From: Scyliorhinus canicula | Lineage: Eukaryota | Direction of reading: 5' to 3' | Assembly (NCBI RefSeq): GCF_902713615.1 | Contig: NC_052171.1 | Location: 23,968,324-24,032,323, forward strand | Length of the DNA stretch: 64,000 nt | Shown here: positions 1 to 62,167 of the stretch, piece after piece | Numbering within the stretch: position 1 is the first letter of the stretch | Layout: each line of letters starts with the position of its first letter | The notes under the pieces: generated by a model | The model's database searches: none | Told to the model about the DNA's origin: nothing | The model's input: the letters and a program-made list of their open reading frames with translations, nothing else | Position numbers and translations under genes: made by a program

Positions 1-340
1 TCCCCCTCACCCCCACATCCCCCTCACCCCCACATCCCCCTCACCCCCACATCCCCCTCACCCCCACATCCCCCTCACCCCAATCCCACATCCCCCTCAC
101 CCCAATCCCACATCCCCCTCACCCCAATCCCACATCCCCCTCACCCCAATCCCACATCCCCCTCACCCCAATCCCACATCCCCCTCACCCCAATCCCACA
201 TCCCCCTCACCCCAATCCCACATCCGCCTCACCCCAATCCCACATCCCCCTCACCCCAATCCCACATCCCCCTCACCCCAACCCCACATCCCCCTCACCC
301 CCACATCCCCCTCACCCCCACATCCCCCTCACCCCAATCC
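1..340. repeat. C-rich minisatellite, 17-bp and 22-bp unit variants (TCCCCCTCACCCCCACA / TCCCCCTCACCCCAATCCCACA)
   Basis: Directly visible tandem units running off the left edge. The opposite strand has regular G4-5 runs. Confidence 0.95.
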
Positions 341-469
341 CGGGGTGGGGGAGTGTGGGGGTGCCTAAAAGGAACACAATGTCAATTGTAAATAATATCC
401 GCTTCAGTCATCTCCTGTACAGTGCAAACATGTAAACTTCACTAAAAATATTGTTTTAAAAGAAGATTA

Positions 470-860
470 TAAGAGCAGGGAGGTCATGTTGGGGCTGTAC
501 AGGACTTTGGTGAGGCCACAGCTGGAGTAGTGTGTTCAGTTCTGGTCACCGCACTATAGGGAGGAGGTGATTGCCTGGACGGGGTACAGAGGAGATTCAC
601 CAGGACGTTGCCTGGGATGGAGCGTGTCAGCTGTGAAGAGAGGCTGGAGCAGAGAAGGCCGGGAGGGGACCTGATTGAGGTGGATAAGATGATGAGGGAC
701 ATGGGAAGGGTGGATAGAAAGCAACTCTTCCCCTTCGTTGAAGGGTCAATAACAGGGGGGCATCATTTTGAGGTGAAAGGCAGGAGGTTTTGAGGGGTTT
801 TGAGGGGATGTTTGTTTTCACCCAGAGAGCAGTGGCAGTCTGCAACGCACTGGTGAAGCA
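470..860 (+). mobile_element. CR1-type LINE 3' fragment (RT C-terminus)
   Basis: Degenerate translation LVRPQLE..VQFWSP.Y....LE.VQRRFTR.LPG...GDLIEV.K.M, typical of the CR1 ORF2 end. Confidence 0.85.
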
Positions 861-1578
861 CTGGACGGAAACTGTGCACACCAGCTTCACATTTATGACA
901 GAATGCAATCTTGATCCAATGGCAAGGAAACAGTCCGATTGGAGGTTTTGTTCAGCTGCAGCCTCTGTCCAGGTGGCACATCTTCCTCACGTTCCTCTGT
1001 TTTGGAGGACATGCTCGCCAGGGCCCCGTCTGCTGATTATTTCTTGGGTTCCTAACAGGGCTTCACAGTAGCCAAAAGCAACCCAGGACATAAAGAATCC
1101 AACATAAAGATCGACTCCTGCTTACTCAGGTTTCACAGTGAGGACCAGGAGGTGGACTGGAATCTCAACAAATATATATCCCCTGAGAATAAACTAGCAA
1201 CAAAGTCTGCAAAGGAATATAGATAGTTTAACTGAGTGGGCAAGGGCCTGGCAATGGAGTACAATATTGGTAAATGTGAGGTAATCCAATTTGTTAGGAA
1301 TAACAGCAAAGTGGTAAAAAGTTGCAGCATGCTGCTGTGCAGAGGGACCTGGGTGTCCTTGTGCATGAATCAAAAAAGTTGGTTTGCAGATGCAGCAGGT
1401 AATTAAGAAGGCAAATGGAATTCTGTCCTTCATTGCTAGATGGATTAAGTTTAAAAACAGGGAGGTTATGTTGCTGGTGAGGCCACACCTGTGTACAGTT
1501 TTGGCCTCCTTCCTTCAGAAAGGATGTACTGGCACTGGAGGGGGTGCAGAGGAGATTCACTAGGTTGATTCTGGAGTT

Positions 1579-1818
1579 CAGTAAGAAGTCTTACAACACC
1601 AGGTTAAATTCCAACAGGTTTGTTTCAAACACGAGCTTTCGGCGCACTGCTCCTTCCTCAGGTGAATGGAGAGGTATCAACATACCTCTCCATTCACCTG
1701 AGGAAGGAGCTGCGCTCCGAAAGCTCGTGTTTGAAACAAACCTGTTGGACATTAACCTGGTGTTGTAAGACTTCTTACCGTACTCACCCCAGTCCAACGC
1801 CGGCATATCCACATCATC
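1579..1818. mobile_element. Penelope-like terminal-repeat insertion forming a palindrome with 97-bp arms, carrying a hammerhead-type motif
   Basis: Arms 1581-1677 and 1682-1778 with a 4-nt loop. 12-bp target-site duplication GATTCTGGAGTT at 1567-1578 and 1819-1830. CTGAGGA-A-GGAGC-tgc-GCTCC-GAAA at 1698-1722. Confidence 0.75.
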
Positions 1819-1848
1819 GATTCTGGAGTTGAGAGGATTGGCGTACTT

Positions 1849-2110
1849 TGTGAGGGCCACGAAGAATCTAGCACAAGTTGAAGGATAGAAAGAAATAACA
1901 TTTATTTACAATAACATATTTATCAATAGCAGTAGCAGCAACTCCCTTGCTGCTCACTCCTCTTTAGCTGGTTCCAAACTGGCCAGCTTTATTTATGCAG
2001 GGGATCTGCTAATGATTTCTCCGCCCCCCTCAATGGGGAACCTCATACTCCCAAAGGATTGTGGGATTACCATTAGTCCCCAACTAGCGGTAAGCAGGCA
2101 GGTTATAACA
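1849..2110 (-). mobile_element. Short solo-LTR-like insertion
   Basis: TG...CA termini. AATAAA motifs on the minus strand. Interrupts a CR1 fragment. No clean TSD found. Confidence 0.5.
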
Positions 2111-2746
2111 GCATCTGAGAAGAGACTGAGTAGACTGGGACTATACTCATTGGAAGAATGAGGCAGATCTTACAGAAACATAAAATTACGAAGGAAATAA
2201 ATTGGATAGAAGCAGGGAGGTTGTTTCCATTGGCGGGTGAAACAAGAACTATGTGGCATCGCCTCAAAATAGTGGGGAGCAGATTTAGGACTGAGTTGAG
2301 GAGGAACTTTTTCAGCCAAAGGATTGTGAACCTGTGGAATTCCTGCCCAGTGAAGCAATTGAGGCTACCTCGTCAAGGCAAAGATAGATAGATTTTTGAA
2401 CAGTAAAGGAATTAAGGGTTAGGGCGGGAAAGTGGAGCTGAGCCCACAATAAGATCACCTTAGTGAATGGCGGAGCAGGCTCGAGGGGCCAAATGGCCTA
2501 CTCCTGCTCCAAGTTCTCATGTTCTTATAAAAAAAATGGATTGGTAGGACTCCGAGGAAGGGGTGTTGCTTTTGAAAATATAAATGCACAACATTCACTG
2601 GTTCACTCTTTACAAACCCTGCAAATTACATCTTCAAAATCTTCAATAGATTTGTCAGACAATTTCCCTTTATACCATAAGCCACCAAATCAGCTGGAAC
2701 TACTAACCTACTCCCTAAGGCTGTGGAGTGTCGGCAGAAATGCATT

Positions 2747-3063
2747 GAACATAGAACATAGAACAGTACAGGCCCTTCGGCCCTCGATGTTGTGCCGAGC
2801 AATGATCACCCTACTTAAACCCACGTAACCCGTATCCCAACAATCCCCCCATTAACCTTACACTACGGGCAATTTAGCATGGCCAATCCACCTAACCCGC
2901 ACATCTTTGGACTGTGGGAGGAAACCGGAGCACCCGGAGGAAACCCACGGACACACGGGGAGGACGTGCAGACTCCACACAGACAGTGACCCAGCCGGGA
3001 ATCGAACCTGGGACCCTGGAGCTGTGAAGCATTGATGCTAACCACCATGCTACCGTGAGGCCC
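2747..3063 (-). mobile_element. tRNA-derived V-SINE (HE1-like)
   Basis: tRNA-like A/B-box head (GGTTCGATTCCC), V-domain GGGTTTCCTCCGGGTGCTCCGGTTTCCTCCCACAGTCC, CR1-like tail ending in (TTCTATG)n. Confidence 0.9.
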
Positions 3064-3599
3064 CTAATTGATTTTGATCTTTCAGAATTTGTGAGATTCA
3101 AAAGCTTCCACGTGAATTATAAGTTAACAAACATAACACCGATATTCCAGAAATGAGAGAGAGAGAAAATGGGTTACTATAGTCTAATATCAATAATGGA
3201 CAAATGCTGGAATCTATCATTAGAGATGCAACAACATGAGTTTATTTTCTCTTTTATTTTGGACTGAGTTTTGACCCTCCCCTCCCAAGATTTACTGCTC
3301 TCTTTAGAAGCTCAGTTAGGGATATATTAATACAGCTAGTGAAATTTGACCACAAAGGACATTGCCCCCCAACCTGATCAGATTCTCAGGCAAAAGCCCA
3401 TAGGTTTATCCATTCTAACCAGTTACTGGATAGTCACCAAGGGGGGAGGGTCTCGAGTCATTGATCTGCTTCTGCCCCCAGGATATTGGAATCTGTCATT
3501 CGCCTCCCACACGAGCTATGGTTCTACTCATCTCGTGTTTGAAGCATGTGCACTTAAACGTAGATGTCTCTAGTGAAACCTTTCATTCCTGTTACTCAC

Positions 3600-3719
3600 A
3601 AGCACTCTGCCAGTCAGTGACTGAGCTGATATCATTCGCTGCGCCCATTCCTGCACTGCGAAATTCAGACTGACATCCTTTACTTTCGAAGTTTGCCTGG
3701 CATTCAGTTCTTCAATCTC
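3600..3719 (-). CDS. Slo-family (KCNMA1/KCNU1-like) K+ channel alpha subunit, coding exon 3 (end of S0-S1 linker, start of S1)
   Basis: ttccag|GAG...CTT|gtgagt, 120 nt, phase 0/0. EIEELNARQTSKVKDVSLNFAVQEWAQRMISAQSLTGRVL matches Slo1 [20 protein letters not shown]. As recalled, KCNMA1 also has an intron after GRVL. Confidence 0.88.
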
Positions 3720-4056
3720 CTGGAACACATTGAGGGTCAACAAGTTCGGCAAAGTGATCATCAATCTAAATTGTTCTTGTTTTCGTCAGACTGCGCTTTA
3801 TTGGGAGAGTTGCCTTGGTTTGCGAGGTTACTGTGCTGAGGGCTCCACCAATCCCCACAGACGAACATCTCGGGCTGATTCTCCCTTTGGGGGACTAAGT
3901 CCCCACACCGGCATGAAAACGGTGGTCTTTTACGGCAGGAAAACTGGCGGAAAACGGCCACTCTGCTCCTGGGGGTGGGGGATTGGAACCAGGCACCGTA
4001 GAGCTACCGGCTCTAGCTGCCGATACAGCCCAGAGCATTGCTCTGTGTACTCTGCT

Positions 4057-4305
4057 TTCATTGTCTGTGCGGAGTCTGCACGTTCTCCCCGTGTCTGCGT
4101 GGGTCTCCTCCGGGTGCTCCGGTTTCCTCCCACAGTCCAAAGACGTGCATGTTAGGTGGGTTGGCCGTGATAAATTGCCCTTATTGACCAAAAAGGTCAG
4201 GAGGGGTTATTAAATTACGGGAATAGGGTGGAAGTGAGGGCTTAAGTGGGTCGGTGCGGACTTGATGGGCCGAATGGCCTCCTTCTGCACTGTATGTTCT
4301 ATGTA
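4057..4305 (+). mobile_element. 5'-truncated V-SINE nested in a GC-rich Harbinger-type MITE remnant (~3870-4470)
   Basis: V-domain and tail present. Flanks resemble the MITE family at 14881, 16140 and 40567. Confidence 0.75.
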
Positions 4306-4629
4306 TTGCCTCGTCCGTGGCCTGCAGCGGCTGCACCCTGCTTCATGGCGAACCGCAAAAATAGTCCCCCCTTCGGTCGGCTCGCACGCCCCAGGCCGCC
4401 CCCCCCCCGCACAGTGCCCCCAGCCCCAAATAAAGCCCCCCCTGCCGGCGGATTAGCCCTCCCCTGACTGTGGCTAAATTTCCCCTTAATTGGAAAAAAA
4501 AAGAATCTAGATTTTCAACCAAAAAATAATTTTTTTAAAACTTATTGGGATTTCGAAGTATCCCAATAAGGGGGAGCTGGGGTTGTCAATTCTAGTTGGC
4601 AGTATTCGTGGAGTTAACTGTTTCCAAAA

Positions 4630-5175
4630 AAGGCCGCACTCAGAATATTGCAATTCTGGTCACCACACTACCACAACGATGTGGATGCTTTGGAGAGGGT
4701 GCAGTGGAAGTTTACCAGGCCTCCTGGTCTGGAGGGTGTTAGCTATGTGGAGAGGCTGAATGGACTCGGACTGTTTTCATTAGAAAGGCGGGGGTTGTGG
4801 GTGCGACCTGATAGAGGTCTACAAGATTATGAGGGGCATGGATAGAGTGGATGGGCAGGCACTCTTTCCCAGGGTGGAGGGGTCAGTCACCAGGGGGCAT
4901 AGTTTAAGGTCCGTGGGGCAAAGTTTAGAGGAGATGTGCGAGGCAGGTTTTTTACGCAGAGGGTGGTGAGTGACTGGAACGTGTTGCCAGGGGAGGCTGT
5001 GGAAGCAGATACATTAACGGCGTTCAAAAGGCATCTCGACAAACACATGGATAGGATGGGTATGGGGGGATACGGCACATGGAAGGGCTGAGGGTTTCGG
5101 CCAAGAGTGGTATCATGACCAGTACAGGTTTAGAGGGCCGAAGGGCCTGTTTCTGTGCTGTATTGTTCTTTGTTC
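4630..5175 (+). mobile_element. CR1-type LINE 3' end (HER1-like)
   Basis: QFWSPHY..DVDALERVQ motif. The 3' tail GAGGGCCGAAGGGCCTGTT..TGTGCTGTA is shared with the SINEs. Confidence 0.85.
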
Positions 5176-5318
5176 TGAAATACAATTGATCTTTTTAGAA
5201 TTATGCAACATTTCTTACAAAACAGCAGGGATATGCTGGGTTTGTGAAAGTTGCTCAATAAACCCAAATTCTTTCTTTGTTGCCTCTAAGCGCAGCAGCT
5301 TGATGTGATGGGAGATAC

Positions 5319-5432
5319 CTCGTCTGACAAGCCTTTTCTCAATTGGTCCAGGACAACATGGCTGATCTTGTGCCTTCCACTGATGGTGATTTCATGAGTC
5401 TGTAACATGCTTTTCTTCCTCATGTTCATCCA
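5319..5432 (-). CDS. Slo-family channel, candidate coding exon 2 (S0-S1 linker)
   Basis: Polypyrimidine tract + gaacag|TGG...GAG|gtatct. 114 nt, open, phase 0/0, joining exons 1 and 3 in frame (WMNMRKKSMLQTHEITISGRHKISHVVLDQLRKGLSDE). No recognisable homology and a weakish donor. Confidence 0.6.
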
Positions 5433-5632
5433 CTGTTCAAAGGCAAAGAAAGGGAGAAATTAATGCAAGGTACAGTCAGCTGGCTTGGAGAGTTAACTGA
5501 GGATATAGTCATCAGAAAACAGTCATTGAGCTCCTGCCACGGAAGGCCAGGAAATTCATTTAAATATAGGATAATATCATTAAGCAAGCCCTCCTGCTGG
5601 GACTTCCCTTCCGCCCCTCCCTCACTAAGTAG

Positions 5633-6950
5633 TCATGGGTCACGCTGGCACGATTTACTGCAGCTGTATAAAAACGAGAACTTGCCAACCTTGCCTCCGA
5701 AGCCGATATCTGAGGTGAGCTCACAGGTCACCATTACCCTCCAGGGTGTCAGTGGCAGAGGGAGCCACAGAGAGGACGAGGGGGATCCAGATAGGTTCAA
5801 CCTGCTGCCAGGGGGGAGGTTCAGTATTGGCATCTCGGGGCTGGGATCGCTCAAGCCTTCGAAGCCCCTCATTCTCCTGAACTCCAGCGAGTGTGGCCCT
5901 AACCGCCTCAGTCTCTCAAGTCTGGGCCTTGCCCACATGGCGGATCTGCCCAAGGTGCAGAGTGTCATCGACTGCTGCATCCACAGGCTTCTGCCTTCCC
6001 CTCCTGGGTGGAAGGCTCTGTACTGAGCTCGTGCCAATCCCGTGGGCCCCTGGGCTCCACCATGCGACAGAGGGGCAGCTGGACTGAGAACCGGACGCAC
6101 CACCGTCCTCTGGCACTGACACGTGTGGATTCCCACTCGTGCTTGCACCATGTGGCAGCACGGTAGCATGGTGGTTAGCATAAATGCTTCACAGCTCCAG
6201 GGTCCCAGGTTCGATTCCCGGCTGGGTCACTGTCTGTGTGGAGTCTGCACGTCCTCCCCGTGTCTGCGTGGGTTTCCTCCGGGTGCTCCGGTTTCCTCCC
6301 ACAGTCCAAAGATGTGCGGGTTAGGTGGATTGGCCATGCTAAATTGCCCGTAGTGTCCTAAAAAGTAAGGTTAAGGGGGGGGGGGGGGTTGTTGAGTTAC
6401 GGGTATGGGGTGGATACGTGGGTTTGAGTAGGGTGATCATGGCTCGGCACAACATTGAGGGCCGAAGGGCCTGTTCTGTGCTGTACTGTTCTATCTCTAT
6501 CTATGTGGTTGAAGCCCTGCACCATGGAGCTCATGTCCTCAGCCATGGACCACGTAGCGGACGGACATCCCCTGCCGTGGAGTGCACATCCTGCTCCAAG
6601 ACCTCCACCGTGGATGCCACCCTCACAATGTTGTCCTTGTGCTAGACTGACGGCACCATCTCTTTGGAACAGAAGTTGATCGAGCTTCTCCAGTCACCCA
6701 GCAATCCGAGGAGGGATGCAGTCAACCCTTCCTGATGCTCACGACTCTGCCTTTCCAGCTCCAGCAGCTCTGGATTGACCACATCCAAGGGCATGTCATC
6801 GGCCTGGGGCTCAGGAGAGTCCTGGGCTCCAGCATCCCTCTGAAGGCCGAATTCCTGGGACGTCCCTGCCTCCGCAGGATCGCCAGCTGCGAGCCTGCCA
6901 CCGAGGTGTGAGTATATGCACCTTTCACAGGATCCATGTTTCTCGGCCTC
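5633..6950 (-). mobile_element. Degenerate PIF/Harbinger-associated Myb/SANT-like ORF remnant, interrupted by a V-SINE
   Basis: Translation fragments (ELLELERQSREHQEG...) resemble the remnant at 13700-14820. Confidence 0.45.
6154..6505 (+). mobile_element. V-SINE (HE1-like), full length
   Basis: tRNA head, V-domain, poly-G linker, CR1-like tail. Confidence 0.9.
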
Positions 6951-6954
6951 GTAG

Positions 6955-7571
6955 ACTCTTAAGTGGTTGGACTTGCACCAGATGCCCACCACCACCTCGA
7001 GAGTCACTGTGGAGTAATTTCCCACTCATTTTGTACCTACGGGATACCAGAGATATTAGTCACGGATAACGGGACCCCGTTCACGAATGAGGATGTCCCG
7101 TACCACCCGTCCTCAATTAGTTTGGCAGAGCGAGCGGTTCAAATATTTAAATGAGGCACGGGGAAACAGACCACGGGCTCCCTGGATGCAAGACTGGCGG
7201 GGTTTCTGTTCCATTACCCATGCCTCATGACACATTGACCGGAATCTCCAAACTCTCCTGAGCCTGACATTCCCGGGTTTTGCGGAAAGCTAGAATCAAA
7301 ACGGGACAGTCAGAAGAAATATCACGACACCGGACACCTATATATGTCCAGAAATTCACCTATTGGCTCACTGGGAGAAATGGGGCCCATATCGTACAAG
7401 GACAGAACCCAAGGAAGGACCGTGCAGAAACATGTGCACCACCTCAATGTAAATATCTTAGAGTTTCTGTACGTAGTCCTGGAAATATGCTCACATGTGC
7501 CACACATAGTTAGGAACATTCACATACTACATTATTTCTTGGTACAAACACATTTTTTTTTAAAGGGGGTA
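6955..7571 (+). mobile_element. Ty3/Gypsy integrase remnant with polypurine tract
   Basis: GIPEILVTDNGTPFT...PYHPSS..LAERAVQIFK is an rve integrase core. PPT TTTTAAAGGGGG at ~7557-7570. The LTR-like TGTAATAACC resumes at 7985 after a nested solo LTR. Confidence 0.8.
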
Positions 7572-7975
7572 TGTCATAATATACACATCAGTGTATAATG
7601 GTGCAGGGACACACACTGACTGACACACTGCAAGACCAATCAGCACACACAACACAGCAGCCAAGCACCAGTTAGGGCACGCTCACTATAAAGCCAGAGG
7701 GCACTAGTTTTCCCGCTCACTCGGGATGCAGCCTCTGAGACAGACAGAGCCCACAGTCAGTAGCACAAACATCTACCATGTGCTGGCAGTATAGGCTGGT
7801 CAGGTTAGGCAAAAGTCTTCAGTCAACCTAACATAGTGTCAACCCACAGTGCATGTATGTTTAACAGCTCTTAGTTAAATAAAATAGAGTTGTACTATTA
7901 CAAGTGTTGGTAGCCTGTCTATGTTACTGCTAAGGTAGACGCAGTCTCCACAGATCCAGAGTACCCAACACATCA
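7572..7975 (+). mobile_element. Solo LTR inserted in the PPT of a Gypsy remnant
   Basis: TG...CA ends. TATAAA at ~7687, AATAAA at ~7878. Flanks GGGTA / GGGGA form a near-perfect 5-bp TSD. Confidence 0.75.
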
Positions 7976-8206
7976 GGGGAGGGGTGTAATAACCCTCACG
8001 AGGCCCACGGGATCGATCTGCCTGTGGAACTGGTGAAGTATGAGATTCCCCGCCAGCAGACCCGCCCAGTTGAAGCTCCTAATTAACCTGTATACAAGCC
8101 GGCCTGGACAGGGACAGGGATGTTAGCAGTTCCGACTGGAACCAATACTGTGTTTATATGCCGCCGTCGACAACACGGCCTCCAGAATCTTTATAGTAGA
8201 ATCTTT

Positions 8207-8535
8207 GGGCCTCACGGTAGCATAGTGGTTAGCATCAATGCTTCACAGCTCCAGGGTCCCAGGTTCGATTCCCGGCTGGGTCTCTGTCTGTGTGGAGTCT
8301 GCACGTCCTCCCCGTGTGTGCGTGGGTTTCCTCCGGGTGCTCCGGTTTCCTCCCACAGTCCAAAGATGTGCAGGTTAGGTGGATTGGCCATGCTAAATTG
8401 CCCGTAGTGTAAGGTTAATTGGGGGATTGTTGGGTTACGGGTATACGGGTTACGTGGGTTTAAGTAGGGTGATCATTGCTCGGCACAACATCGAGGGCCG
8501 AAGGGCCTGTTCTGTGCTGTATTATTGTTCTATAT
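8207..8535 (+). mobile_element. V-SINE (HE1-like)
   Basis: Near-identical to the copies at 2747 and 11941. Confidence 0.9.
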
Positions 8536-8636
8536 CTAGTCTCCACTGGTACACTTGTGTAAGCTAAACAAGGTGATATAAATTCAGAACTTTGCTTTTC
8601 CTTCATTCAGCAAACACCACATAATTCACACTTTAC

Positions 8637-8876
8637 CAAAGTCCTTTCGCCCTGATATATTTGAAGCAGAACCATCCATGAGTAGCGCAGGCCTCGATAT
8701 AACAGAATGAAGAGCATGCCTCCGAGGAATACTGTAAAGGAGGACCCTATAGCGCCCCACCACATGTCCTGGCTCATGATCCGACAGTTACGACTTGGCT
8801 TCCTGATGTCATTTCTGCTATCACCGAAAACCAGGTTGCTGATCAGATCAGTATTGTTGTTTCTGTGACTTGACAT
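8637..8876 (-). CDS. Slo-family (KCNMA1/KCNU1-like) K+ channel alpha subunit, first coding exon (N-terminus + S0 helix)
   Basis: First in-frame ATG at 8876 (in-frame TGA upstream at 8939-8937), donor TTG|gtaaag, 80 codons. QDMWWGAIGSSFTVFLGGMLFILLYRGLRYSW aligns with Slo1 S0 [32 protein letters not shown]. Likely acceptor for the exon (tgtcag|) at 8995. Confidence 0.88.
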
Positions 8877-9099
8877 GACAGTATCACCTTCCCTATCTAA
8901 ATTCACACTGTCGTACTGCCCTGACTCAGCCACTCCTCAGACCAATTGATGTTATCAATGATCCCCATTGTGAGTCACTCTTAGAATCATGGAATCTGAC
9001 AGCACAGATAAAGAAACCATTTGACCCGGGCCCTGTCTGTGCCTGCTCCTTGGTGCAGCACCCAACATTTTCCCAAGAACTCTGTCAACTCAAATACAA

Positions 9100-9432
9100 G
9101 CACACTGGTTAGCACAGTTGCTTCACAGCTCCAGGGTCCCAGGTTCGATTCCCGGGTTGGGTCACTGCCTGTGCGGAGTCCCACGTCCTCCCCGTGTCTG
9201 CGTGGGTTTCCTCCGGGTGCTCCGGTTTCCTCCCACAGTCCAAAGATGTGCAGGTCAGGTGGATTGGCCATGATAAGTTGCCCCTTAGTGACCAAACAGG
9301 TGAGTTGGGGTTACTGGGTTACGGAGATCGGGTGGAGGCGTGAGCTTAAGTAGGGTGCTCTTTCCAAGGGCCGGTGCAGACTCGAGGGGCCGAATGGCCT
9401 CTTTGTGCAGTGTAAATTCTATGATATCTATG
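9100..9432 (+). mobile_element. V-SINE (HE1-like)
   Basis: tRNA head, V-domain, tail. Confidence 0.85.
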
Positions 9433-22637: not shown

Positions 22638-22982
22638 GAGGCGATTCCAGACCGGCCGGGTTTCTCCAACATGTTCTGTTTTTGTTTCAGATTTTCAGTA
22701 TCTGCCGTGTTTTGCTTTTATTATACCAGCATTGGCTCAATGGGCATATTGGGTTCCTTCGCTGCTGCAACGTCTGTGATTCGGCTTCAAAGAAAAGAAA
22801 GAACTTGCATTTATGTAACTCTTTCCAACCTCACAGACTAAACAATTAAACAGACTGATCGCTCCTTCCCAAACTCCAAGAAATTCCAACTGATGAGAGT
22901 TTTGGGATAGTGTCTTGGGGTCTGGATCATTGAAATTCCCATATTGTTCTTCACACTGGGATTATTATTCCCTGGCCTACAG

Positions 22983-23132
22983 GTTGGTTCTCCAACAGCA
23001 TTTGCAGACCAGGAAGTGGACACCAGGTGTCGAGAGGCTGCAAGGAGATACGGACACACTCTGTACATACCCAGTGGGGCACTCTGGGGGGCAGCAGATA
23101 TCCAGAAAATGGCCAACAGAGGGACGTTGAAG
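22983..23132 (+). CDS. ASPDH: ASPDH coding exon 4
   Basis: ctacag|GTT...AAG|gtgagc, 150 nt. VGSPTAFAD...SGALWGAADIQKM. Confidence 0.95.
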
Positions 23133-23479
23133 GTGAGCAGTCATGGGCTATGCAAACTAGGCCGTGCTACTCAATAGGGTCAAAGAAGAGTTGATTTTCT
23201 TCATTCCTGTCTTACTGGACATGTATGGTTCCTGAGTACTCCAAGCAGCGGTCTCACTGGGGCAGAAGTTACAAAAGAATAACTGAGTGAGTTGAGAAAG
23301 GAGACGATAATTTGAACAGGGAGGGTTGGAGTAACAGAAATGTGAAAAGGTGGAGAGCTGGATGGGAAACTGTGAGGCAGGGTTGGAAGTTGAAGCCTGG
23401 CCTCCAGTCATCTTGGACCCTCTTGCCACTGAACCGAGACCTTGCTGGTGAGCAATGGTCATCCCACGTTAAAAAAAAA

Positions 23480-23830
23480 AAACTCACATACGGGCATCTT
23501 CCACTTCTTCAATGAAGTTCGGAACCTGGAGCATTATGACCCTTGGCTCACTCTAGCCCAGAACCAGTGCGCCACAATCCTGAGTGTGTATGCCCCAATA
23601 CTGGAAACTACAGACCGGTCCAAAGAGGAATTTTACTCCCGCCTCAAACAATCCTTGACAAGAGTGTCAACGAGCGACAAGCTGATCCTCCTTGTCTGCA
23701 CCAGAGTTGGGAAGGAGACAGACCTCTGGGAGGTGTAATCGGCAGAGAGGAGCTAGAGAAATCCAACACTAACGGTAGCCTGCTCCTCCCAAAATGCCTC
23801 GAACAGAGCCTTGTCATAACCAACACCGGA
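23480..23830 (+). mobile_element. RTE-like LINE endonuclease remnant
   Basis: ILSVYAP...KEEFY..L......DKLILL..RVG....GVIG.....NG.LLL..C....LVITNT. Confidence 0.7.
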
Positions 23831-24431
23831 GCTTAGTTAGCAAGGAGGTGAAAGGTTATCTGGGAGTCTCCAGGAATTTGGGGTTGAGTCTACAGTCGGA
23901 TCAGCCTTGATCTTAATGAATAGCAGAACAGGCTCCAGGGGCCGAGTGGCCTCTCCCGCTGCTAATTCGTATGTTCATGGGCGCGATTATCCGACCTCTC
24001 ACTCGAGCGAAGCGAGGCCGGTGAATAGCGGGAAAGGCCGAAAATGAGAACCGCACCAGGCACCATACAGTTTGCGATGCAACTGGCCCGTTCCCCTCGG
24101 CGAAATTGGGATCGCACCGTAGCTTGGCGAGAAACCAATTATCACCACTTAAGCCCCATTTCCATACAATTAACGGGAGAGACCCCATATCCAACGGCCT
24201 CCTTTCATTCAGTGGCCTCCCCATCCAGTGGTCAAGCTGGCGTCGATTCGAACTCCTTTTGAAAAACGTGAACCTGATTAAAAGGGCTTGTGTGGGGAGT
24301 CGAGGAGGGGAGTAGCCATCTCTGCTCAGATGAGGGGTACATTGATAGATGATAGGTGCAAGAGGTCTGATTGGGCAGGACTGAGTGGTCAAGGGGACCT
24401 CCTGGTAGTTGACCTTTGCCCTTTCCCACAG

Positions 24432-24658
24432 GCCCTGAAGGTGACAATGAGCAAACATCCGGACAGCTTCATGCTGCAGGGATACATGCAAGAGCTGAAA
24501 GAAAGGACAAAGGGCCAGCGGACGGTGCTGTACGATGGGCCAGTGAGGAACCTGTGCCCTCTTGCACCGAACAATGTCAACACCATGGCAGCTGCAGCTT
24601 TGGCCGGGCACAACCTGGGCTTTGAGCGGGTGCAGGGCTGCCTGGTAGCTGACCCCAG
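24432..24658 (+). CDS. ASPDH: ASPDH coding exon 5
   Basis: ccacag|GCC...AG|gtaggt, 227 nt. ALKVTMSKHPDSF...TVLYDGPVRNLCPLAPNNVNTMAAAALA...LGF..V.G.LVADP. Confidence 0.95.
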
Positions 24659-25371
24659 GTAGGTACTGCTTCCCGGTTCTTAAAGGCTCAGAGAGACTTG
24701 GGAGCCAAGGTAACCTTTCAATCTGATTGAGATCCATTACCAAAGAAGATAATAGGATTCACGCCATTACAGTCCGGAAGCATTATTAAGAACTGTTATT
24801 AGCAATAATTAAGACATACTTAGTCAGCAAACCTGGCAAGAATACCAGTGAATCCATACATTTGAGATTTTCCGCTGCCTGTTTAGTCCTGAACTGTCTC
24901 TCATGGTCATGACTCATTTTTTAAAAAATCTTTCAATCCCTTATCTTCCTTGTCAATTGCTTCAGTTAAACAGATCCTGACTGAACTGTAAACCAGATCC
25001 TCAGGCTGAAGACAGTTAGAGAAATTCATGAACTATCAAAGATTAATCTGACTTTTCTATTAGCCAGAGTCACAGTCCTTTCAAAACGTGCGAACGCCTG
25101 AGGTATTTTCTGCATACAGATGTGTTTGTCTGATCATTATGAAGGCCTGGCCATCATAAAGTTAACACAAAACAACAACAGTAGGTACATTTGATGCCTT
25201 TAACATAGGAAAGACACGACACGGTGTTAACAGACAACACTGGCATTGAGTTGCATCAGGGGATATTGGAAGAGGTAATCTTGATCGTGGATTGTTAAAG
25301 GAATGTAGAGATGCTGAGAGGTTTAGGGAGGGAATTCCAGATCTTTGAGGCCAGCAGGCAGTAGAAGGAAC

Positions 25372-27844: not shown

Positions 27845-28187
27845 GAATTAGAGAATGTACAGTGCAGAAGGGGGCCATTCAGCCCATCAAGCCAGCACCG
27901 GCCCTTGGAAAGAGCACCCTACCCAAGCCCACACCTCCACCCTATCCCCGTAACCCAGCAATCCCATCTAACCTTTTTTGGACACTAAGGGCAATCCAGC
28001 ATGACCAATCCACCTAACCTGTACATCTTTGGACTGTGGGAGGAAACCGGAGCACCCGGAGGAAACCCACGCAGACACGGGGAGAACGTGCAGACTCCGC
28101 ACAGACAGTGACCCAAGCCGGGAATCGAATCTGGGACCCTGGAGCTGTGAAGCAACAGTGCTAACCACTGTGCTACTGTGCTGCCCG
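27845..28187 (-). mobile_element. V-SINE (HE1-like)
   Basis: tRNA head, V-domain, tail. Confidence 0.88.
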
Positions 28188-29300
28188 TTCTCAATTCTCA
28201 GCAACAACATTTCCTCTTCTCAAGTTATTGTCTGGAGTAGCAAAGGGGATTCAGCAATAAAGGCAGTCCAGCAGAATGAGGAGCTGGATTTTAACCCGTG
28301 CACAATAATTAAGAGTAAGGGATTTATTTGCCCTGAGATCAATGCTGGCTCCATGGGATAGTTTTAAACAGCCTCTGCTGCCCTCTCCTGGAGCTGTGTT
28401 GAGGCCACTCAACTCAAGGTTTTGCATGCTGGGAAGTTTTTGGCAAGTCTGTGAAAACGGCAGATATTCAATAAAAATTGTGCACGGAATAATTTTTATG
28501 CATTGATGGCGAAAGTAGTAATCTCTGAGTCGAATCAGGGGGGCCAGCTTTTTACCCAGACAGGTTCAGAATCCAAGTTCCACGTACACCTCCGGCTCAG
28601 TGAAGCCGTTAAACAAAGTTGCTGAAAGGCTGGGGTCACCATGGTAACACATTGGGGATGGTTTTCCAGCCGCCTTACGCCCACCGCAAATCCCACTATG
28701 CCGGGAGAATAGCGGGAAAGACCCGAAACGGGATCTGCGCCTGGCACCGAATAGTGCGCGATGCTGCCAGCCGGCTGCAGCTGATCACACCTTCACTGTC
28801 CATGAACCAATCAGCGTATTAAAAGCAGCATGAAGCAGGATTACTGGCCAAGATTCTTTATTCAGAATCCACCCCGCTGGAATCGAGAATGTGGCAGGGG
28901 CTCAGCCAATGGGAACCGTTGCCTTTTGTTGGAAAATTCCACCCAGCATCTCAATAAAAATCTCCTCGTAAAACCTCTCTGAATTAATTCTCCAGCAAAG
29001 CCATCACTGGGTGATTTGACGAACAACAAGGCATCTGTTTGGATCGAAGTGTAATCATTAACTGAGGGTAACTTCGCTTGCTGTAGTCAGCTGACCTCTG
29101 CCATGAGGCACTAACTGGGAGCAGCCATGACACATTCATTTCCCAATAGACTACAAGAAGCACAGTACCCATGGGCTCATTACAGCACGTCTCCAAGTCC
29201 AAGGAGATGGCAGGCTGCAAGTTGCAGTCAAAGGATTACTTGCTTTGATCAATTTGTTGAATAACTAATATTTTCCATCCCCTCGCTGCCCTTTTCCTAG

Positions 29301-35453: not shown

Positions 35454-37250
35454 CTATAGTTTGTGACCAGCATTGAAAGAGGTCAGGTGTGGAGAGGAGT
35501 ACAGTCTGTGACGAAGAAGATTCTCATAGGATGAGCCCGCAGCCAAATGCTTGTACAGATCTAAAGGATACCCGGGGGAGCTCAGCACCTGCCCATGAAT
35601 GGCTGGGACCATGAAAGAATTTACAGTGAATGAGGGCATGTATGGTGAGTAGAGGGTCGGACTCTTCACGTGGCTCAAGTGATGCCCATAGCTGGCTGGG
35701 AAACATGTCCTCACTCCCTCGTAGAAGGCGGGATCCTGAGGCCTCAGTGTTGTTGGCAGCCAGGTAGGAACATCAGGTAACGAGGACTTTTGGTCCTTAC
35801 CATCACTAATCCTCTGGCTGTCCTTGCCATCCAGATCTTTGGCAATGAGTAGAGGGGAGACAATGCGGAGTTTCTTCCCATAGGCTGCATCCAGCTCCTT
35901 CTGGCTTCTCTGTGTGGGCTGGGAAAGTAGGCAGCTGGGGGGCCCACTCTTGACATTTGTCGGCAACACGGTGCTCTTTGCCCGCTTGGCTGGAACTCGC
36001 CGCGGGAGGGCGACACTGATGGGGGGGACCCAGCATGCTTTGGGATGGCTGTCAGAGGAAGAGGAGGCCTGGCCAGTAAATGAACTCTTCCTCAGTGGTA
36101 AGGAGCTGCTCTTGGTCTCTGTGACCCAGGACACCTGGGTCTGGTGTGTATTGACTGCGCTGGTTCGAGGGAGGCTAAGGTCTGTTGGTTGATCGTTCGA
36201 AGCGAGTGTCCTCCCATAGTGCCTTGTCAACTTGTGTGCATCAGGTGTCAGGGTGGGGACTGCAGTGCTGCTCAGCTCTCTGAAGCTTCTCTGATTGGTG
36301 CAGCAATCAAAAGGACTCCCTTTGTTGGGGTAATGGAAAAAGGGCTTCACCAGTCCGTGCATGTATGGGCTGCAACAAAAATTCCCAAAGCCCTGAGGGG
36401 CGTGGGAATGCTCAACCGCTCTTCCTTTTGGATCCCTTTCTTCCGGTGCCTTCTGGCCATCAAATGGGGTGACCCGGTCCAAGGAGTAGACGTGGTAATT
36501 GGCTGGGGTGCTGCCGAAGGGCCACTCCAAGTGGTAATCCAAGTGGCCCTGTCGCGGGGGTTGAATGTGATGAATGACAGTCGGTCTGTGAATGCTCACC
36601 TCTGGAGTGGAGCCAGAGGCAGGAGGTGAGTGCTGGACCTCACTGCTCTGTACTGACTTGGCCCCAGCAGGGGTCGAGGCGATGCCAACAGTGTTAAAGC
36701 TGAGGGATGTTGCGTCGTTGCCTTGAGCAAGGAATTTCTTTTTGGCCAAAGGGGACATTATTTCTTGGTCTCTTTTGGAGCGAAGCATGGACAGACGACT
36801 TTTATCCACCTCATGCGACAACTGTGCTGGACACTCATCCTTACTGGCCATCGATGCTTGGGGTTGGTGAGAAGCATCTCTGTCATCTTCGCAAACAGCA
36901 GTGTCCCCCCCAGACATCTCTTCCGACAGGCCCATGGCCAAATCAGCAGTGACGCAGTGTCCATTATGACCCACAACCTTGTTGCCCATCAGTGCCTTGG
37001 AGACTGCTTCTGATGAAGGGCCATTAGCATCCCGGACCTCCTCGGATATCCCATTCTCGCTGGCCCTCGTCACGTCTTGCATTGGGGACTTGGTCCCACA
37101 GCTATTCTGGAGTGAGAGTCCATTTAGTGGCTGCTCTTTAGAGTCTTCACTCCCAGTTGTAGTGTTTCTTGGGTTTGGGGACTCTTTGTCCAAAGATATT
37201 TGTTCCGTCTTATCCTTTCCTACATCTTCAGAAAGCACTTGAGGAAGTAT
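35454..37250 (-). CDS. ARID5-family transcription factor, large terminal exon
   Basis: actcag|ATA, 1797 nt to TAG. ARID5 C-terminal motifs IMSPLAKKKFLAQ, QPTDLSLP, HPKACWV, GKKLRIVSPL, YENLLRHRL, terminal HKL*. Confidence 0.92.
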   Translation of the reverse strand: MLPQVLSEDVGKDKTEQISLDKESPNPRNTTTGSEDSKEQPLNGLSLQNSCGTKSPMQDVTRASENGISEEVRDANGPSSEAVSKALMGNKVVGHNGHCVTADLAMGLSEEMSGGDTAVCEDDRDASHQPQASMASKDECPAQLSHEVDKSRLSMLRSKRDQEIMSPLAKKKFLAQGNDATSLSFNTVGIASTPAGAKSVQSSEVQHSPPASGSTPEVSIHRPTVIHHIQPPRQGHLDYHLEWPFGSTPANYHVYSLDRVTPFDGQKAPEERDPKGRAVEHSHAPQGFGNFCCSPYMHGLVKPFFHYPNKGSPFDCCTNQRSFRELSSTAVPTLTPDAHKLTRHYGRTLASNDQPTDLSLPRTSAVNTHQTQVSWVTETKSSSLPLRKSSFTGQASSSSDSHPKACWVPPISVALPRRVPAKRAKSTVLPTNVKSGPPSCLLSQPTQRSQKELDAAYGKKLRIVSPLLIAKDLDGKDSQRISDGKDQKSSLPDVPTWLPTTLRPQDPAFYEGVRTCFPASYGHHLSHVKSPTLYSPYMPSFTVNSFMVPAIHGQVLSSPGYPLDLYKHLAAGSSYENLLRHRLYSSPHLTSFNAGHKL

Positions 37251-38319
37251 CTGAGTGGGAGACACAAGGATTAATCCTTTAGCACAAGGGTAAGGAACAG
37301 CTGATAAAACAAGGTAAAGGTGAAAGTCAACATAGCTGAGAAGCAACTTTCATGTGTAGAACAAGAAGGAAGATGATGCTATTTCTACAAAGAAAGTTAA
37401 TTCACCTCAGATAATATTTATGGCCTAGAAACAGGCCATTCTGCTGAATAGGTCCATGCTGATGTTGATGCTCCATATGAGCTTCCTCCCAAAATAATAC
37501 TAATCGTAGGAACATAAGACTTAGGGTTGGCCATTTGGCCCTTCAAGTCTGCTCTCCCATTCAAAAAGATCAGGGTTGACCTGGTGGTGGTCTGAACTCC
37601 ACTTTCCTGTCTGTCCCCCCCAACTCTCAACTTCCTCATCTAATCAGAAGTCTAACTCTGCTGCCTTGAAAAAAAATCAATGATCTGGGTCTTAAATGGT
37701 CGACTTCTTATTCTTCAACTGTGTCCTAGCTCTAGTTCCCCCCCAGAAGTGGAAACATTCTCCTGGTATCAAATTCCCTCAGGATCTTCTATGTTTCAAT
37801 AAGACCCCCTCTCATTCTTTCTAAACTCCAGTGGATCTTTGCCCAGAAGATAAGCCCCTCATCCCAGGAATGAGTGGAGTGAACATTATCTGAATCTTTT
37901 GTTTCAGCTCACTGACCTTCACAGATGCTGCTGGACGCTGAGATTTTCCAGGTTTGATTTTGTTTCAGATTTCCGGCATCTGCAGAATTTTGGTTTTCTA
38001 TAGATTCGGAGCTTACTTAATTTAGATTAGGCAAGGCTGAAGTGATGAGCTAGGTTTGTTTAACAGCCTAATGAAGCAGGAATATTTGTTTAATTTGCAA
38101 TCATAATACCTTTGAGTTTCAACGTAGTGATTGAAACTGAGAAACAGAAAACAGGTTGTCAGATTCTAGGTTTAGGTATGCTTGACTTGATAGAATTAGA
38201 CATAGGGCACAATTTAACCATCGCCTTACCATGGGCACAGATCTGGGTGCGCTGGTTAAATAGCAGGAAAAGCCAAAATCGAGATTCACGCCTGGTACTA
38301 TCCAACTTGTCATCTAACC

Positions 38320-60900: not shown

Positions 60901-61409
60901 TACTTCCCCTAATCATATCAACATAATTGATGGGTGTTCATTCTCAAATACTGAAACCGCCTGGGGTTTTTTCCTATTCCCTGTAGTGTCTGATGTAAAC
61001 ATTACCAAAACACTTTTCACCAGAATTGTATTACAGCGAAATGACCACACTTTCTATAAAAACACATGCACATCGAAATAAAAATCCCACTGTGGCTACT
61101 GAGTCACATGCTGGCCCAACCTGTTTCCTGTGTGTGTCTTTACAACAATGTTGGCACGGTGCAGTGCATTACAGACATGCTTTGGGACTGAGATGAGAAA
61201 GCGGGAAATGAGGGGCCCACATGGTGATGCCACCCTCCCTCCCCATTCCATTCACTCTCCACTTGCCATTCTATAAGATTAGGAAATTGTGGTGGGCCTC
61301 CCACTGCTCACAGCAGGTAGCCAGAGAGAGGAGGCGAGGAGATCCTCCACAATGTACCTGGGTATCGGGATTGGTAACTGAATGTAATTGCAGACGGTGA
61401 TATGTCACA

Positions 61410-61720
61410 GTATCATAGAATTTACAGTGCAGAAGGAGGCCATTCGGCCCATCGAGTCTGCACCGGCCCTTGGAAAGAGCACCCTATTTGAGCCCATGCT
61501 GCCACCAAACCTTTTGGACACTAAGGGCAACATCATGGCGAATCTACCTAACCTGCACATCTTTAGACTGTGGGAGGAAACCGGAGCACCCGGAGGAAAC
61601 CCACGCAGACACGGGGAGAACGTGCAAGCTCCGCACTGACAGTGACCCAAGCCGGGAACCGAACCTGAAACCCTGGAGCTGTGAAGCAAATGTGCTAACC
61701 ACTGTGCAACCGTGGTGCCC
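61410..61720 (-). mobile_element. V-SINE
   Basis: V-domain, head, tail. Confidence 0.85.
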
Positions 61721-62167
61721 CGAGCTACACCAGTCATTCTCTCAACAAAATCTCAGTCACTGCGGTGTCTCACAGCCCCCCTCTCCCCACCCCAAGCATT
61801 GGTTAATTTGGGCGCTAGCTAAACCAAGTGTTGCATGATACCACCTGGGTGCCAGCTGCAAGCAACTAACCAGCTCCACAACAGCACATATATACTTCAA
61901 CACACTCTCAGGCAGCATCAAGCACTTCATCAGCTCTGGTCCAGGGGCAGACTGAGAACACCCAATCCTGCCAACTGCGGACTGGCACAACCCTGCCCAC
62001 ACCACATCCACAGCAAAGAGCATGTTTAAAACAGCGATCACAAAGTTGGGAACTCTTTCACACTTCACTTCAATGGCAGCTGAGACTCGGAGATGTTCAC
62101 AAGACTCAGGCAGACTGACATTGAGTGAAGTTACACATTTCCAGTGCCCTTCGCGACAGTGACTTAC

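What the first reader, a model, noticed from the sequence alone, without database searches (positions are those of the whole stretch)
3600..8995. Divergent Slo/BK-family potassium channel gene that is neither a typical Slo1 nor a typical Slo3
Seen: three in-frame minus-strand exons encode an S0 helix (MWWGAIGSSFTVFLGGMLFILLYRGLRYSW) and the pre-S1 motif EWAQRMISAQSLTGRVL. Known: vertebrate KCNMA1 is very conserved here ([34 protein letters not shown]) and is a very large gene. This copy is clearly diverged and has compact introns (1.6-3.2 kb), yet its pre-S1 motif is closer to Slo1 than to mammalian Slo3 as I recall it. Inference: an additional Slo1-related paralogue retained in cartilaginous fish, or a slowly evolving ancestral KCNU1. 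BK channels are central to skate electroreceptor tuning, so an extra family member could matter physiologically.
Basis: partly seen in the sequence, partly recalled or inferred. Interest (0 to 1): 0.85.

Follow-up and report, generated by a model that had tools for sequence, protein, structure and literature searches.

The report
Catshark second Slo channel gene start
The three exons are the real start of an intact, already annotated catshark potassium-channel gene, an old sister of the BK channel gene found in all sharks and rays, most likely the shark form of the sperm channel Slo3 (KCNU1) rather than a new channel type.

Summary
Spliced, the three minus-strand exons (8876-8637, 5432-5319, 3719-3600) equal the first 158 residues of RefSeq XP_038641558.1, a 1285-aa Scyliorhinus canicula protein named "calcium-activated potassium channel subunit alpha-1-like".

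The gene spans 122.6 kb and is intact; all but the first 5.3 kb lies beyond the window start. One orthologue each turned up in 16 elasmobranch species, and an elephant-shark fragment carries the same S0 helix. The proteins are about 50% identical to true KCNMA1. KCNMA1 is a separate gene in Mobula and Heptranchias, and in catshark according to the literature.

The family keeps the voltage-sensor charges, the GYG filter and every side-chain Ca2+ ligand type (D367E, E535, D895, D897, N449Q). The poly-Asp bowl is broken (QEDRDDPD) and M513K and S600K/R are fixed.

Best reading (0.75): the slowly evolving chondrichthyan KCNU1/Slo3 orthologue, as Vicens et al. 2017 reported for elephant shark.

I could not fetch any bony-vertebrate KCNU1 sequence, so the deciding tree was not built. 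A third 2R copy (about 0.13) is not excluded. The scan noted this same stretch once before (s1-236597). Interest is modest.

The parts
8637..8876 (-). Coding exon 1 (80 aa): extracellular N-terminus with a conserved Cys (..KPSRNCRIMSQD), the S0 helix (MWWGAIGSSFTVFLGGMLFILLY) and the start of the S0-S1 linker. Donor GTAAAG at 8636.
   Evidence: identical to P0238 residues 1-80. (S0 vs human Slo1, E = 5e-5). (70% identity to Hemiscyllium P0001). (S0 and the pre-S0 motif are conserved in sharks and rays).
5433..8636 (-). Intron 1 (3204 bp), carrying SINE-like repeat copies.
5319..5432 (-). Coding exon 2 (38 aa, WMNMRKK...GLSDE): the fast-evolving middle of the cytosolic S0-S1 linker. RefSeq isoform X2 (P0022) starts at a Met inside it.
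   Evidence: (only 24-28% identity to rays in this stretch). (a homologous exon is present in the sawfish locus L001:1485-1592).
3720..5318 (-). Intron 2 (1599 bp).
3600..3719 (-). Coding exon 3 (40 aa, EIEELNARQTSK...VQEWAQRMISAQSLTGRVL): the conserved end of the linker up to the S1 boundary. Donor GTGAGT at 3599. The S1 exon (VMMVFLLSFGSLF...) lies beyond the window start.
   Evidence: E142 aligns with Slo1 D99. (conserved across the family). (sawfish exon at L001:10811-10984, with S1 in a separate exon at 12684-12767).

Best explanation
The window holds the first three coding exons of an intact 122.6-kb gene of the small-spotted catshark (RefSeq XP_038641558.1, 1285 aa). It encodes the pore-forming subunit of a Slo-type, seven-helix K+ channel: S0, a voltage sensor, a GYG pore and two RCK domains forming a gating ring. 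The exons encode the extracellular N-terminus, the S0 helix and a long three-exon cytosolic S0-S1 linker. The gene belongs to a family found in sharks and rays, with an S0 fragment in a chimaera. This family is an old paralogue of KCNMA1. It is most probably the chondrichthyan orthologue of KCNU1 (Slo3), which has diverged far less from the BK-like ancestor than bony-vertebrate Slo3. Inferred, not shown: it forms a voltage-gated K+ channel that can still bind Ca2+ at both gating-ring sites, with altered affinity or coupling because basic residues are fixed beside the sites. Its Mg2+ site is not maintained.
For: Identity of the gene:
- The spliced exons equal the P0238 N-terminus.
- The gene range and Pfam domains (Ion_trans, Ion_trans_2, Slo-like_RCK, BK_channel_a, Slowpoke_C) are.

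The family:
- Thirteen elasmobranch species appear; Amblyraja, Leucoraja and Chiloscyllium punctatum are added.
- An elephant-shark fragment (P0007, A0A4W3HFW5) carries the family S0 motif DMWWGAIGSS rather than the KCNMA1 motif [10 protein letters not shown].

Separate from KCNMA1:
- Identity to KCNMA1 is about 50%.
- Mobula and Heptranchias have both genes.
- Catshark kcnma1 is XM_038783287.1.
- In the tree the family is monophyletic (100/100) and follows the species tree, and elasmobranch KCNMA1 groups with bony-vertebrate KCNMA1 (100/100).

Function:
- Searches show D153, R167, D186, R207, R210, R213 and E219 invariant, and GYG in 13 of 15 species.
- D895 and D897 are kept in 14 of 15. E535 is kept, and D367E and N449Q are fixed.
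- The ligand list comes from bioRxiv 10.1101/2022.12.15.520511.

KCNU1 reading:
- Published models keep only kcnma1 and kcnu1 after the 2R duplications (PMC8518378).
- Vicens et al. found exactly one non-Slo1 gene in elephant shark and placed it in the Slo3 clade (PMC5337896).
- The uninterrupted poly-Asp run is lost (QEDRDDPD).
Against: - No bony-vertebrate KCNU1 sequence could be retrieved, so orthology was never tested by a tree.
- My tree has no outgroup and cannot be rooted.
- The family is more like human Slo1 than human Slo3 everywhere tested. For the gating ring the scores are 809 vs 520 bits, and the same ranking holds by region.
- The two Ca-bowl Asp ligands are kept, whereas Vicens used absence of the bowl as a Slo3 criterion.
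- The usual KCNU1 neighbours (ZNF703, UNC5D) are not seen. The 55 kb upstream holds ASPDH and an ARID5-like gene instead.
- RefSeq did not call it kcnu1.
- The link between P0007 and Vicens' elephant-shark proteins (XP_007882802, XP_007882895) is inferred.
- There are no expression data.
Confidence: 0.75

Rival explanations
1. A third ohnologue of the Slo1 type from the two vertebrate genome duplications, kept only in cartilaginous fishes and lost in bony vertebrates. KCNU1 would then be either lost in chondrichthyans or still unnoticed there.
For: It looks BK-like rather than Slo3-like: the Ca-bowl ligands are kept and scores are higher to Slo1 than to Slo3. The local neighbourhood (ASPDH, ARID5-like) is not the ZNF703/UNC5D one reported for KCNU1. 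RefSeq did not assign KCNU1 orthology.
Against: It needs reciprocal losses or an overlooked third gene. Vicens et al. found only Slo1 plus one Slo3-type gene in elephant shark. High similarity to Slo1 is expected for a slowly evolving KCNU1, because KCNMA1 hardly changes and mammalian Slo3 evolves fast. A 55-kb view of synteny is too small to count.
Confidence: 0.13
2. A duplicate of KCNMA1 made on the chondrichthyan stem, after the split from bony vertebrates, which then diverged quickly.
For: The unrooted tree has the same topology whether the root lies on the family branch or on the bony-vertebrate KCNMA1 stem. The family evolves about eight times faster than KCNMA1, so a long branch is expected in either case.
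Against: The stem separating the family from KCNMA1 is 1.37 changes per site, against 0.06 between shark and bony KCNMA1. The family has Pro and Tyr in LRLLQLPEILQY where every KCNMA1 has FSEILQF. From memory these are the invertebrate Slo states, which would require reversions. Vicens' rooted tree put the elephant-shark copy with Slo3.
Confidence: 0.07
3. A decaying or mis-assembled gene copy: a pseudogene, or chance ORFs in repeat-rich DNA.
For: The region is full of SINE-like repeats. Several orthologue models are truncated or marked low quality.
Against: The 1285-aa reading frame carries all domains. One orthologue was found per elasmobranch species, and the orthologues follow the species tree. 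Gating charges and the pore are invariant. Splice sites are canonical.
Confidence: 0.02

Closest known systems
KCNU1 / Slo3 (KCa5.1), including the elephant-shark Slo3 of Vicens et al. 2017 (PMC5337896)
   Same: It is the second Slo1-type gene of a jawed vertebrate. It has the same S0 + 6TM + two-RCK build. The uninterrupted poly-Asp bowl is lost. It evolves much faster than KCNMA1. The family has GFG instead of GYG in two stingrays, as I recall for mammalian Slo3 (from memory).
   Different: It keeps both Ca-bowl Asp ligands and the RCK1 carboxylates. It is much closer to Slo1 than human Slo3 is (809 vs 520 bits for the gating ring). It has a long acidic/lysine-rich tandem-repeat tail. ZNF703 and UNC5D are not in view. 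Tissue expression and pH gating are unknown.
KCNMA1 / Slo1 / BK alpha subunit
   Same: The overall architecture is the same. About 50% of residues are identical. S0 is recognisable (MWW...GG), as is the pre-S1 motif (W A . . MISAQ.LTGRVL). All voltage-sensor charges, GYG and the Ca2+ ligand chemistry are kept.
   Different: It is a separate gene from KCNMA1 in Mobula and Heptranchias, and in catshark according to the literature. The S0-S1 linker is longer. D894E, D896R, M513K, S600K/R, N449Q and D367E are fixed. The Mg2+ site (N172, E374, E399) is not kept in rays. The gene spans 123 kb rather than several hundred kb. Its rate of change is about eightfold higher. From memory, not tested here: the KCNMA1 linker lies in one exon, against three exons here.

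Membership tests
Slo-family K+ channel alpha subunit (Slo1/Slo3 type) | An extra N-terminal S0 helix ahead of a 6-TM voltage-gated K+ channel core with a GYG filter | tested here: met
   S0 matches human Slo1 residues 19-53. S1-S6 and TVGYGD align end to end with human Slo1. The gating charges are invariant.
Slo-family K+ channel alpha subunit (Slo1/Slo3 type) | A cytosolic gating ring of two RCK domains plus the Slowpoke C-terminal domain | tested here: met
   Pfam PF22614 (twice), PF03493 and PF21014 hit the product. Residues 404-1094 of the Hemiscyllium orthologue (P0001) align with the Slo1 gating ring 3mt5 at 809 bits.
KCNMA1 (Slo1, BK) orthologue | Falls inside the gnathostome KCNMA1 group and is the only such gene in the species | tested here: not met
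   The family is a separate group (100/100), and elasmobranch KCNMA1 sits with bony KCNMA1. Mobula and Heptranchias have both genes. Catshark kcnma1 is XM_038783287.1.
KCNMA1 (Slo1, BK) orthologue | Canonical calcium bowl QDDDDDPD and RCK1 site D367/M513 | tested here: not met
   The bowl reads QEDRDDPD, and D367E and M513K are fixed in all 15 family members. All 11 KCNMA1 rows keep the canonical residues.
KCNU1 (Slo3) orthologue | Groups with KCNU1 of bony vertebrates in a tree rooted with Slo1 or invertebrate Slo | not testable with these tools
   Three homology searches and the one representative search returned only this family and KCNMA1. KCNMA1 isoforms fill every top-120 list. The only KCNU1 seen is PDB 4hpf, as a score.
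KCNU1 (Slo3) orthologue | Lacks the Slo1 calcium bowl (criterion b of Vicens et al.) | tested here: inconclusive
   The poly-Asp run is interrupted (E-D-R-D-D), but the two ligand residues D895 and D897 are kept in 14 of 15 species.
KCNU1 (Slo3) orthologue | Lies between UNC5D and ZNF703 (criterion c of Vicens et al.) | tested here: inconclusive
   Only 55 kb upstream and 10 kb downstream could be seen. These hold ASPDH and an ARID5-like gene and neither marker. In human the gaps to these markers are roughly a megabase (from memory), so absence here says little.
KCNU1 (Slo3) orthologue | Testis-predominant expression and activation by alkaline pH | not testable with these tools
   The supplements of the catshark tissue atlas are not held as text. 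No electrophysiology exists.

The most novel reading that the evidence does not exclude
The family is not KCNU1 but a third Slo1-type gene from the early vertebrate genome duplications, kept only in cartilaginous fishes. It would be a BK-like, Ca2+-binding channel with its own N-terminus and repeat tail. This would overturn the published model that only kcnma1 and kcnu1 survived 2R.
Probability: 0.13. Interest if true: 0.6.

Novelty: new member of a known kind. Interest (0 to 1): 0.3.

Why it matters
If this is the shark KCNU1, it is a little-changed form of the sperm channel Slo3. Every side-chain Ca2+ ligand is still there, while the neighbouring residues have been remodelled and then held fixed in every shark and ray examined.

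That would date the loss of Ca2+ sensing and the rise of pH gating in Slo3 to the bony-vertebrate line. It would also give a natural intermediate to express and record.

In practice, RefSeq labels the whole family "KCNMA1-like", which hides it from surveys of KCNU1 and of BK genes in elasmobranch sensory organs. It does not change what is known about electroreceptor tuning, which rests on the canonical kcnma1.

Tried and rejected
1. Fetching KCNU1 sequences for a tree failed in four ways:
- a whole-protein search;
- a search scored on S0-linker to S4 only;
- a 601-aa piece chosen so that full-length KCNMA1 fell outside the length window;
- the exon-1 representative search.
All returned only the family and KCNMA1. 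One low-identity hit (P0357, Brachyhypopomus) looked like a candidate but has a full QDDDDDPD bowl and is a KCNMA1 copy.

2. Getting elephant-shark Slo3 fragments failed. No elephant-shark protein was listed. P0007 has no contig on record.

3. Synteny beyond the window gave little. The 10-kb flanks around the catshark, Hemiscyllium and Pristis genes show only ASPDH or nothing.

4. Tissue expression could not be checked. The catshark atlas supplements are not held.

5. Reading invertebrate Slo or human Slo3 residues from PDB alignments failed, because human Slo1 always fills the five alignments shown. The ancestral-state argument therefore rests on memory.

6. The ESM Atlas look-up gave names only.

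7. A search for an S1 exon in 1-3599 found none.

8. One literature search was too broad to be useful.
Full report
**What is in the sequence**

On the minus strand three open stretches carry canonical splice signals. Exon 1 runs from the first ATG at 8876 to 8637 and is followed by GTAAAG. Exon 2 runs 5432-5319, after ...TTGAACAG and before GTATCT. Exon 3 runs 3719-3600, after ...TGTTCCAG and before GTGAGT. All junctions are phase 0.

The introns are 3204 and 1599 bp and hold SINE-like repeats.

Exon 1 alone matches the S0 helix of human Slo1 in the PDB (E = 5e-5, Slo1 residues 19-53). Exon 3 matches Slo1 residues 86-115, the stretch that runs into S1. No S1 exon lies between position 1 and 3599, so the gene continues off the window start.

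**Which gene it is**

A search of exon 1 against protein-cluster representatives found a 1296-aa shark protein (P0001, Hemiscyllium) at 70% identity. From it I reached the catshark proteins P0022 and P0238, which are RefSeq XP_038641559.1 and XP_038641558.1 of Scyliorhinus canicula. Both are named "calcium-activated potassium channel subunit alpha-1-like", isoforms X2 and X1.

The 158 residues spliced from the window are identical to the start of P0238, which goes on with VMMVFLLSFGSLF..., that is S1. The window is therefore catshark DNA.

The gene spans 122.6 kb on a 24.9-Mb record of GCA_902713615.2. Its product carries Ion_trans, Ion_trans_2, two Slo-like_RCK, BK_channel_a and Slowpoke_C domains. 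It is neither broken nor truncated.

**The family**

Homology searches listed one such protein each for 13 species: Hemiscyllium, Chiloscyllium plagiosum, Stegostoma, Heterodontus, two Scyliorhinus, Carcharodon, Cetorhinus, Mustelus, Heptranchias, Narcine, Pristis, Hemitrygon and Mobula. Cluster look-ups added Amblyraja, Leucoraja and Chiloscyllium punctatum.

Below these the lists jump straight to true KCNMA1 at about 50% identity.

An elephant-shark protein fragment (P0007, UniRef A0A4W3HFW5) has the family's S0 (DMWWGAIGSS...) and not the KCNMA1 form ([10 protein letters not shown]). The gene therefore probably predates the chimaera-elasmobranch split.

In the sawfish locus L001 the exon 2 and exon 3 homologues and a separate S1 exon are all present. 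The split N-terminal architecture is thus shared by sharks and rays.

**Relation to KCNMA1**

Mobula and Heptranchias have a true KCNMA1 as well (P0279, P0304). [quoted passage not shown]

I built a maximum-likelihood tree of 15 family members and 11 KCNMA1 sequences on 1043 columns:
- The family is one group (100/100), and its internal order follows the species tree.
- The two elasmobranch KCNMA1 sequences sit with bony-vertebrate KCNMA1 (100/100).
- The connecting branch is 1.37 changes per site, against about 0.06 between shark and bony KCNMA1.
- Paths inside the family are roughly eight times longer than the matching KCNMA1 paths.

The tree has no outgroup. It rules out a duplication after the shark-ray split, but not one on the chondrichthyan stem.

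**Is it KCNU1?**

The literature recognises two Slo1-type genes in jawed vertebrates, kcnma1 and kcnu1, with the other two 2R copies lost (PMC8518378). Vicens et al. 2017 found Slo3 in birds, reptiles, gar, herring, salmon and elephant shark (PMC5337896). They used three criteria: tree position, absence of the poly-Asp bowl, and synteny with ZNF703 and UNC5D. In elephant shark they reported Slo1 plus one further gene, assembled from two fragments and placed with Slo3.

The simplest reading is that the family here is that gene. It would carry the RefSeq label "KCNMA1-like" because its best hit is the near-invariant KCNMA1 rather than the fast-evolving mammalian Slo3.

I could not test this directly.

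The only KCNU1 datum is the human Slo3 gating ring in the PDB. It scores 520 bits, against 809 for the Slo1 ring. That ranking is expected under either reading.

Local synteny does not help either. ASPDH lies head to head about 8.3 kb upstream. An ARID5-like gene follows, known only from earlier first-reader notes and not tested here; its large exon (35454-37346) gave no Pfam hit. Nothing lies within 10 kb downstream.

**How it probably works**

I aligned the protein to human Slo1 structures with the standard numbering and tabulated the key positions across the family.
- The voltage-sensor residues D153, R167, D186, R207, R210, R213 and E219 never vary.
- The filter is GYG, except GFG in the two stingrays.
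- According to a BK preprint, Ca2+ in the RCK1 site is held by the side chains of D367 and E535 and by three backbone carbonyls. In the bowl it is held by the side chains of D895 and D897, two backbone carbonyls, and N449 of the neighbouring subunit.
- Here E535, D895 and D897 are kept (the bowl is degraded only in Mobula). D367 is always Glu and N449 is always Gln, so every ligand keeps its chemistry.
- Around the sites, D894E, D896R, M513K and S600K/R are fixed in all members, and Q889 is His or Tyr.
- The Mg2+ site residues N172, E374 and E399 drift, especially in rays.

I infer a voltage-gated K+ channel that still binds Ca2+, with changed affinity or coupling. This is inference from residues, not a measurement.

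**The N-terminal region itself**

The pre-S0 motif with its Cys and the S0 helix are well conserved between sharks and rays. Exon 2 is barely conserved (24-28% identity). Exon 3 is conserved again.

From S0 to S1 the family has 24 more residues than gar KCNMA1 in the alignment.

**Verdict**

It is not a discovery of a new channel type. The gene is an annotated, unstudied member of a chondrichthyan-wide family, most likely KCNU1 (0.75).

The alternatives are a third 2R copy (0.13), a chondrichthyan-stem KCNMA1 duplicate (0.07) or a pseudogene (0.02).

The point worth keeping is that this copy retains the Ca2+ ligands that bony-vertebrate Slo3 is reported to lack.

Noticed in passing
window about 17100-24700 (+): An ASPDH gene (285-aa product with NAD_binding_3 and Asp_DH_C) lies head to head with the Slo gene. 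Its start is about 8.3 kb from the Slo start codon. The C-terminal domain exon is at 24288-24659.
   Followed up: partly
window 35454-37346 (-): A 630-aa open exon with no Pfam hit. Earlier notes call it the large last exon of an ARID5-like gene and a possible third ARID5 paralogue. Typing it against ARID5A and ARID5B would tell which paralogon the Slo gene sits in.
   Followed up: no
window 3572-3599 (-), just after the exon 3 donor: The first intron codons read VSNRNERFH and then a stop. The bamboo-shark gene models (P0001, P0019) read the homologous VSNKNEKFHLRH... through in frame for about 23 residues before S1. This may be a conserved donor-proximal element or an alternative 5' splice site used in other sharks.
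   Followed up: no
P0238 residues about 1215-1285, and the tails of P0021, P0023-P0028 and P0030: The C-terminal tail is a tandem repeat of about 15 residues. It is acidic and lysine-rich in sharks (..SGEEITAGKSNEEEK..) and runs to well over twenty copies in Cetorhinus. Rays have a Pro/Thr-rich unit instead (..PGAQPVATTPG..). Copy number and sequence change quickly between species.
   Followed up: no
P0030 (Hemitrygon), P0031 (Mobula): The two stingrays have GFG instead of GYG in the selectivity filter. Mobula also has a degraded calcium bowl (D894G, D897G). This suggests further loss of BK-like features within rays.
   Followed up: partly
window 2860-3050, 3930-4190, 6120-6360, 8210-8410, 9020-9300, 12080-12440, 28030-28200, 61400-61840: Many copies, in both orientations, of one SINE-like element. 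It is recognisable by the recurring frame ..NPPN.HIFGLWEETGAPGGNPR.HGE.VQTPHRQ.. and fills the introns and flanks.
   Followed up: no
P0022 (isoform X2): The second RefSeq isoform starts at a Met inside exon 2 and so lacks S0. It may be an annotation by-product or an S0-less variant.
   Followed up: no
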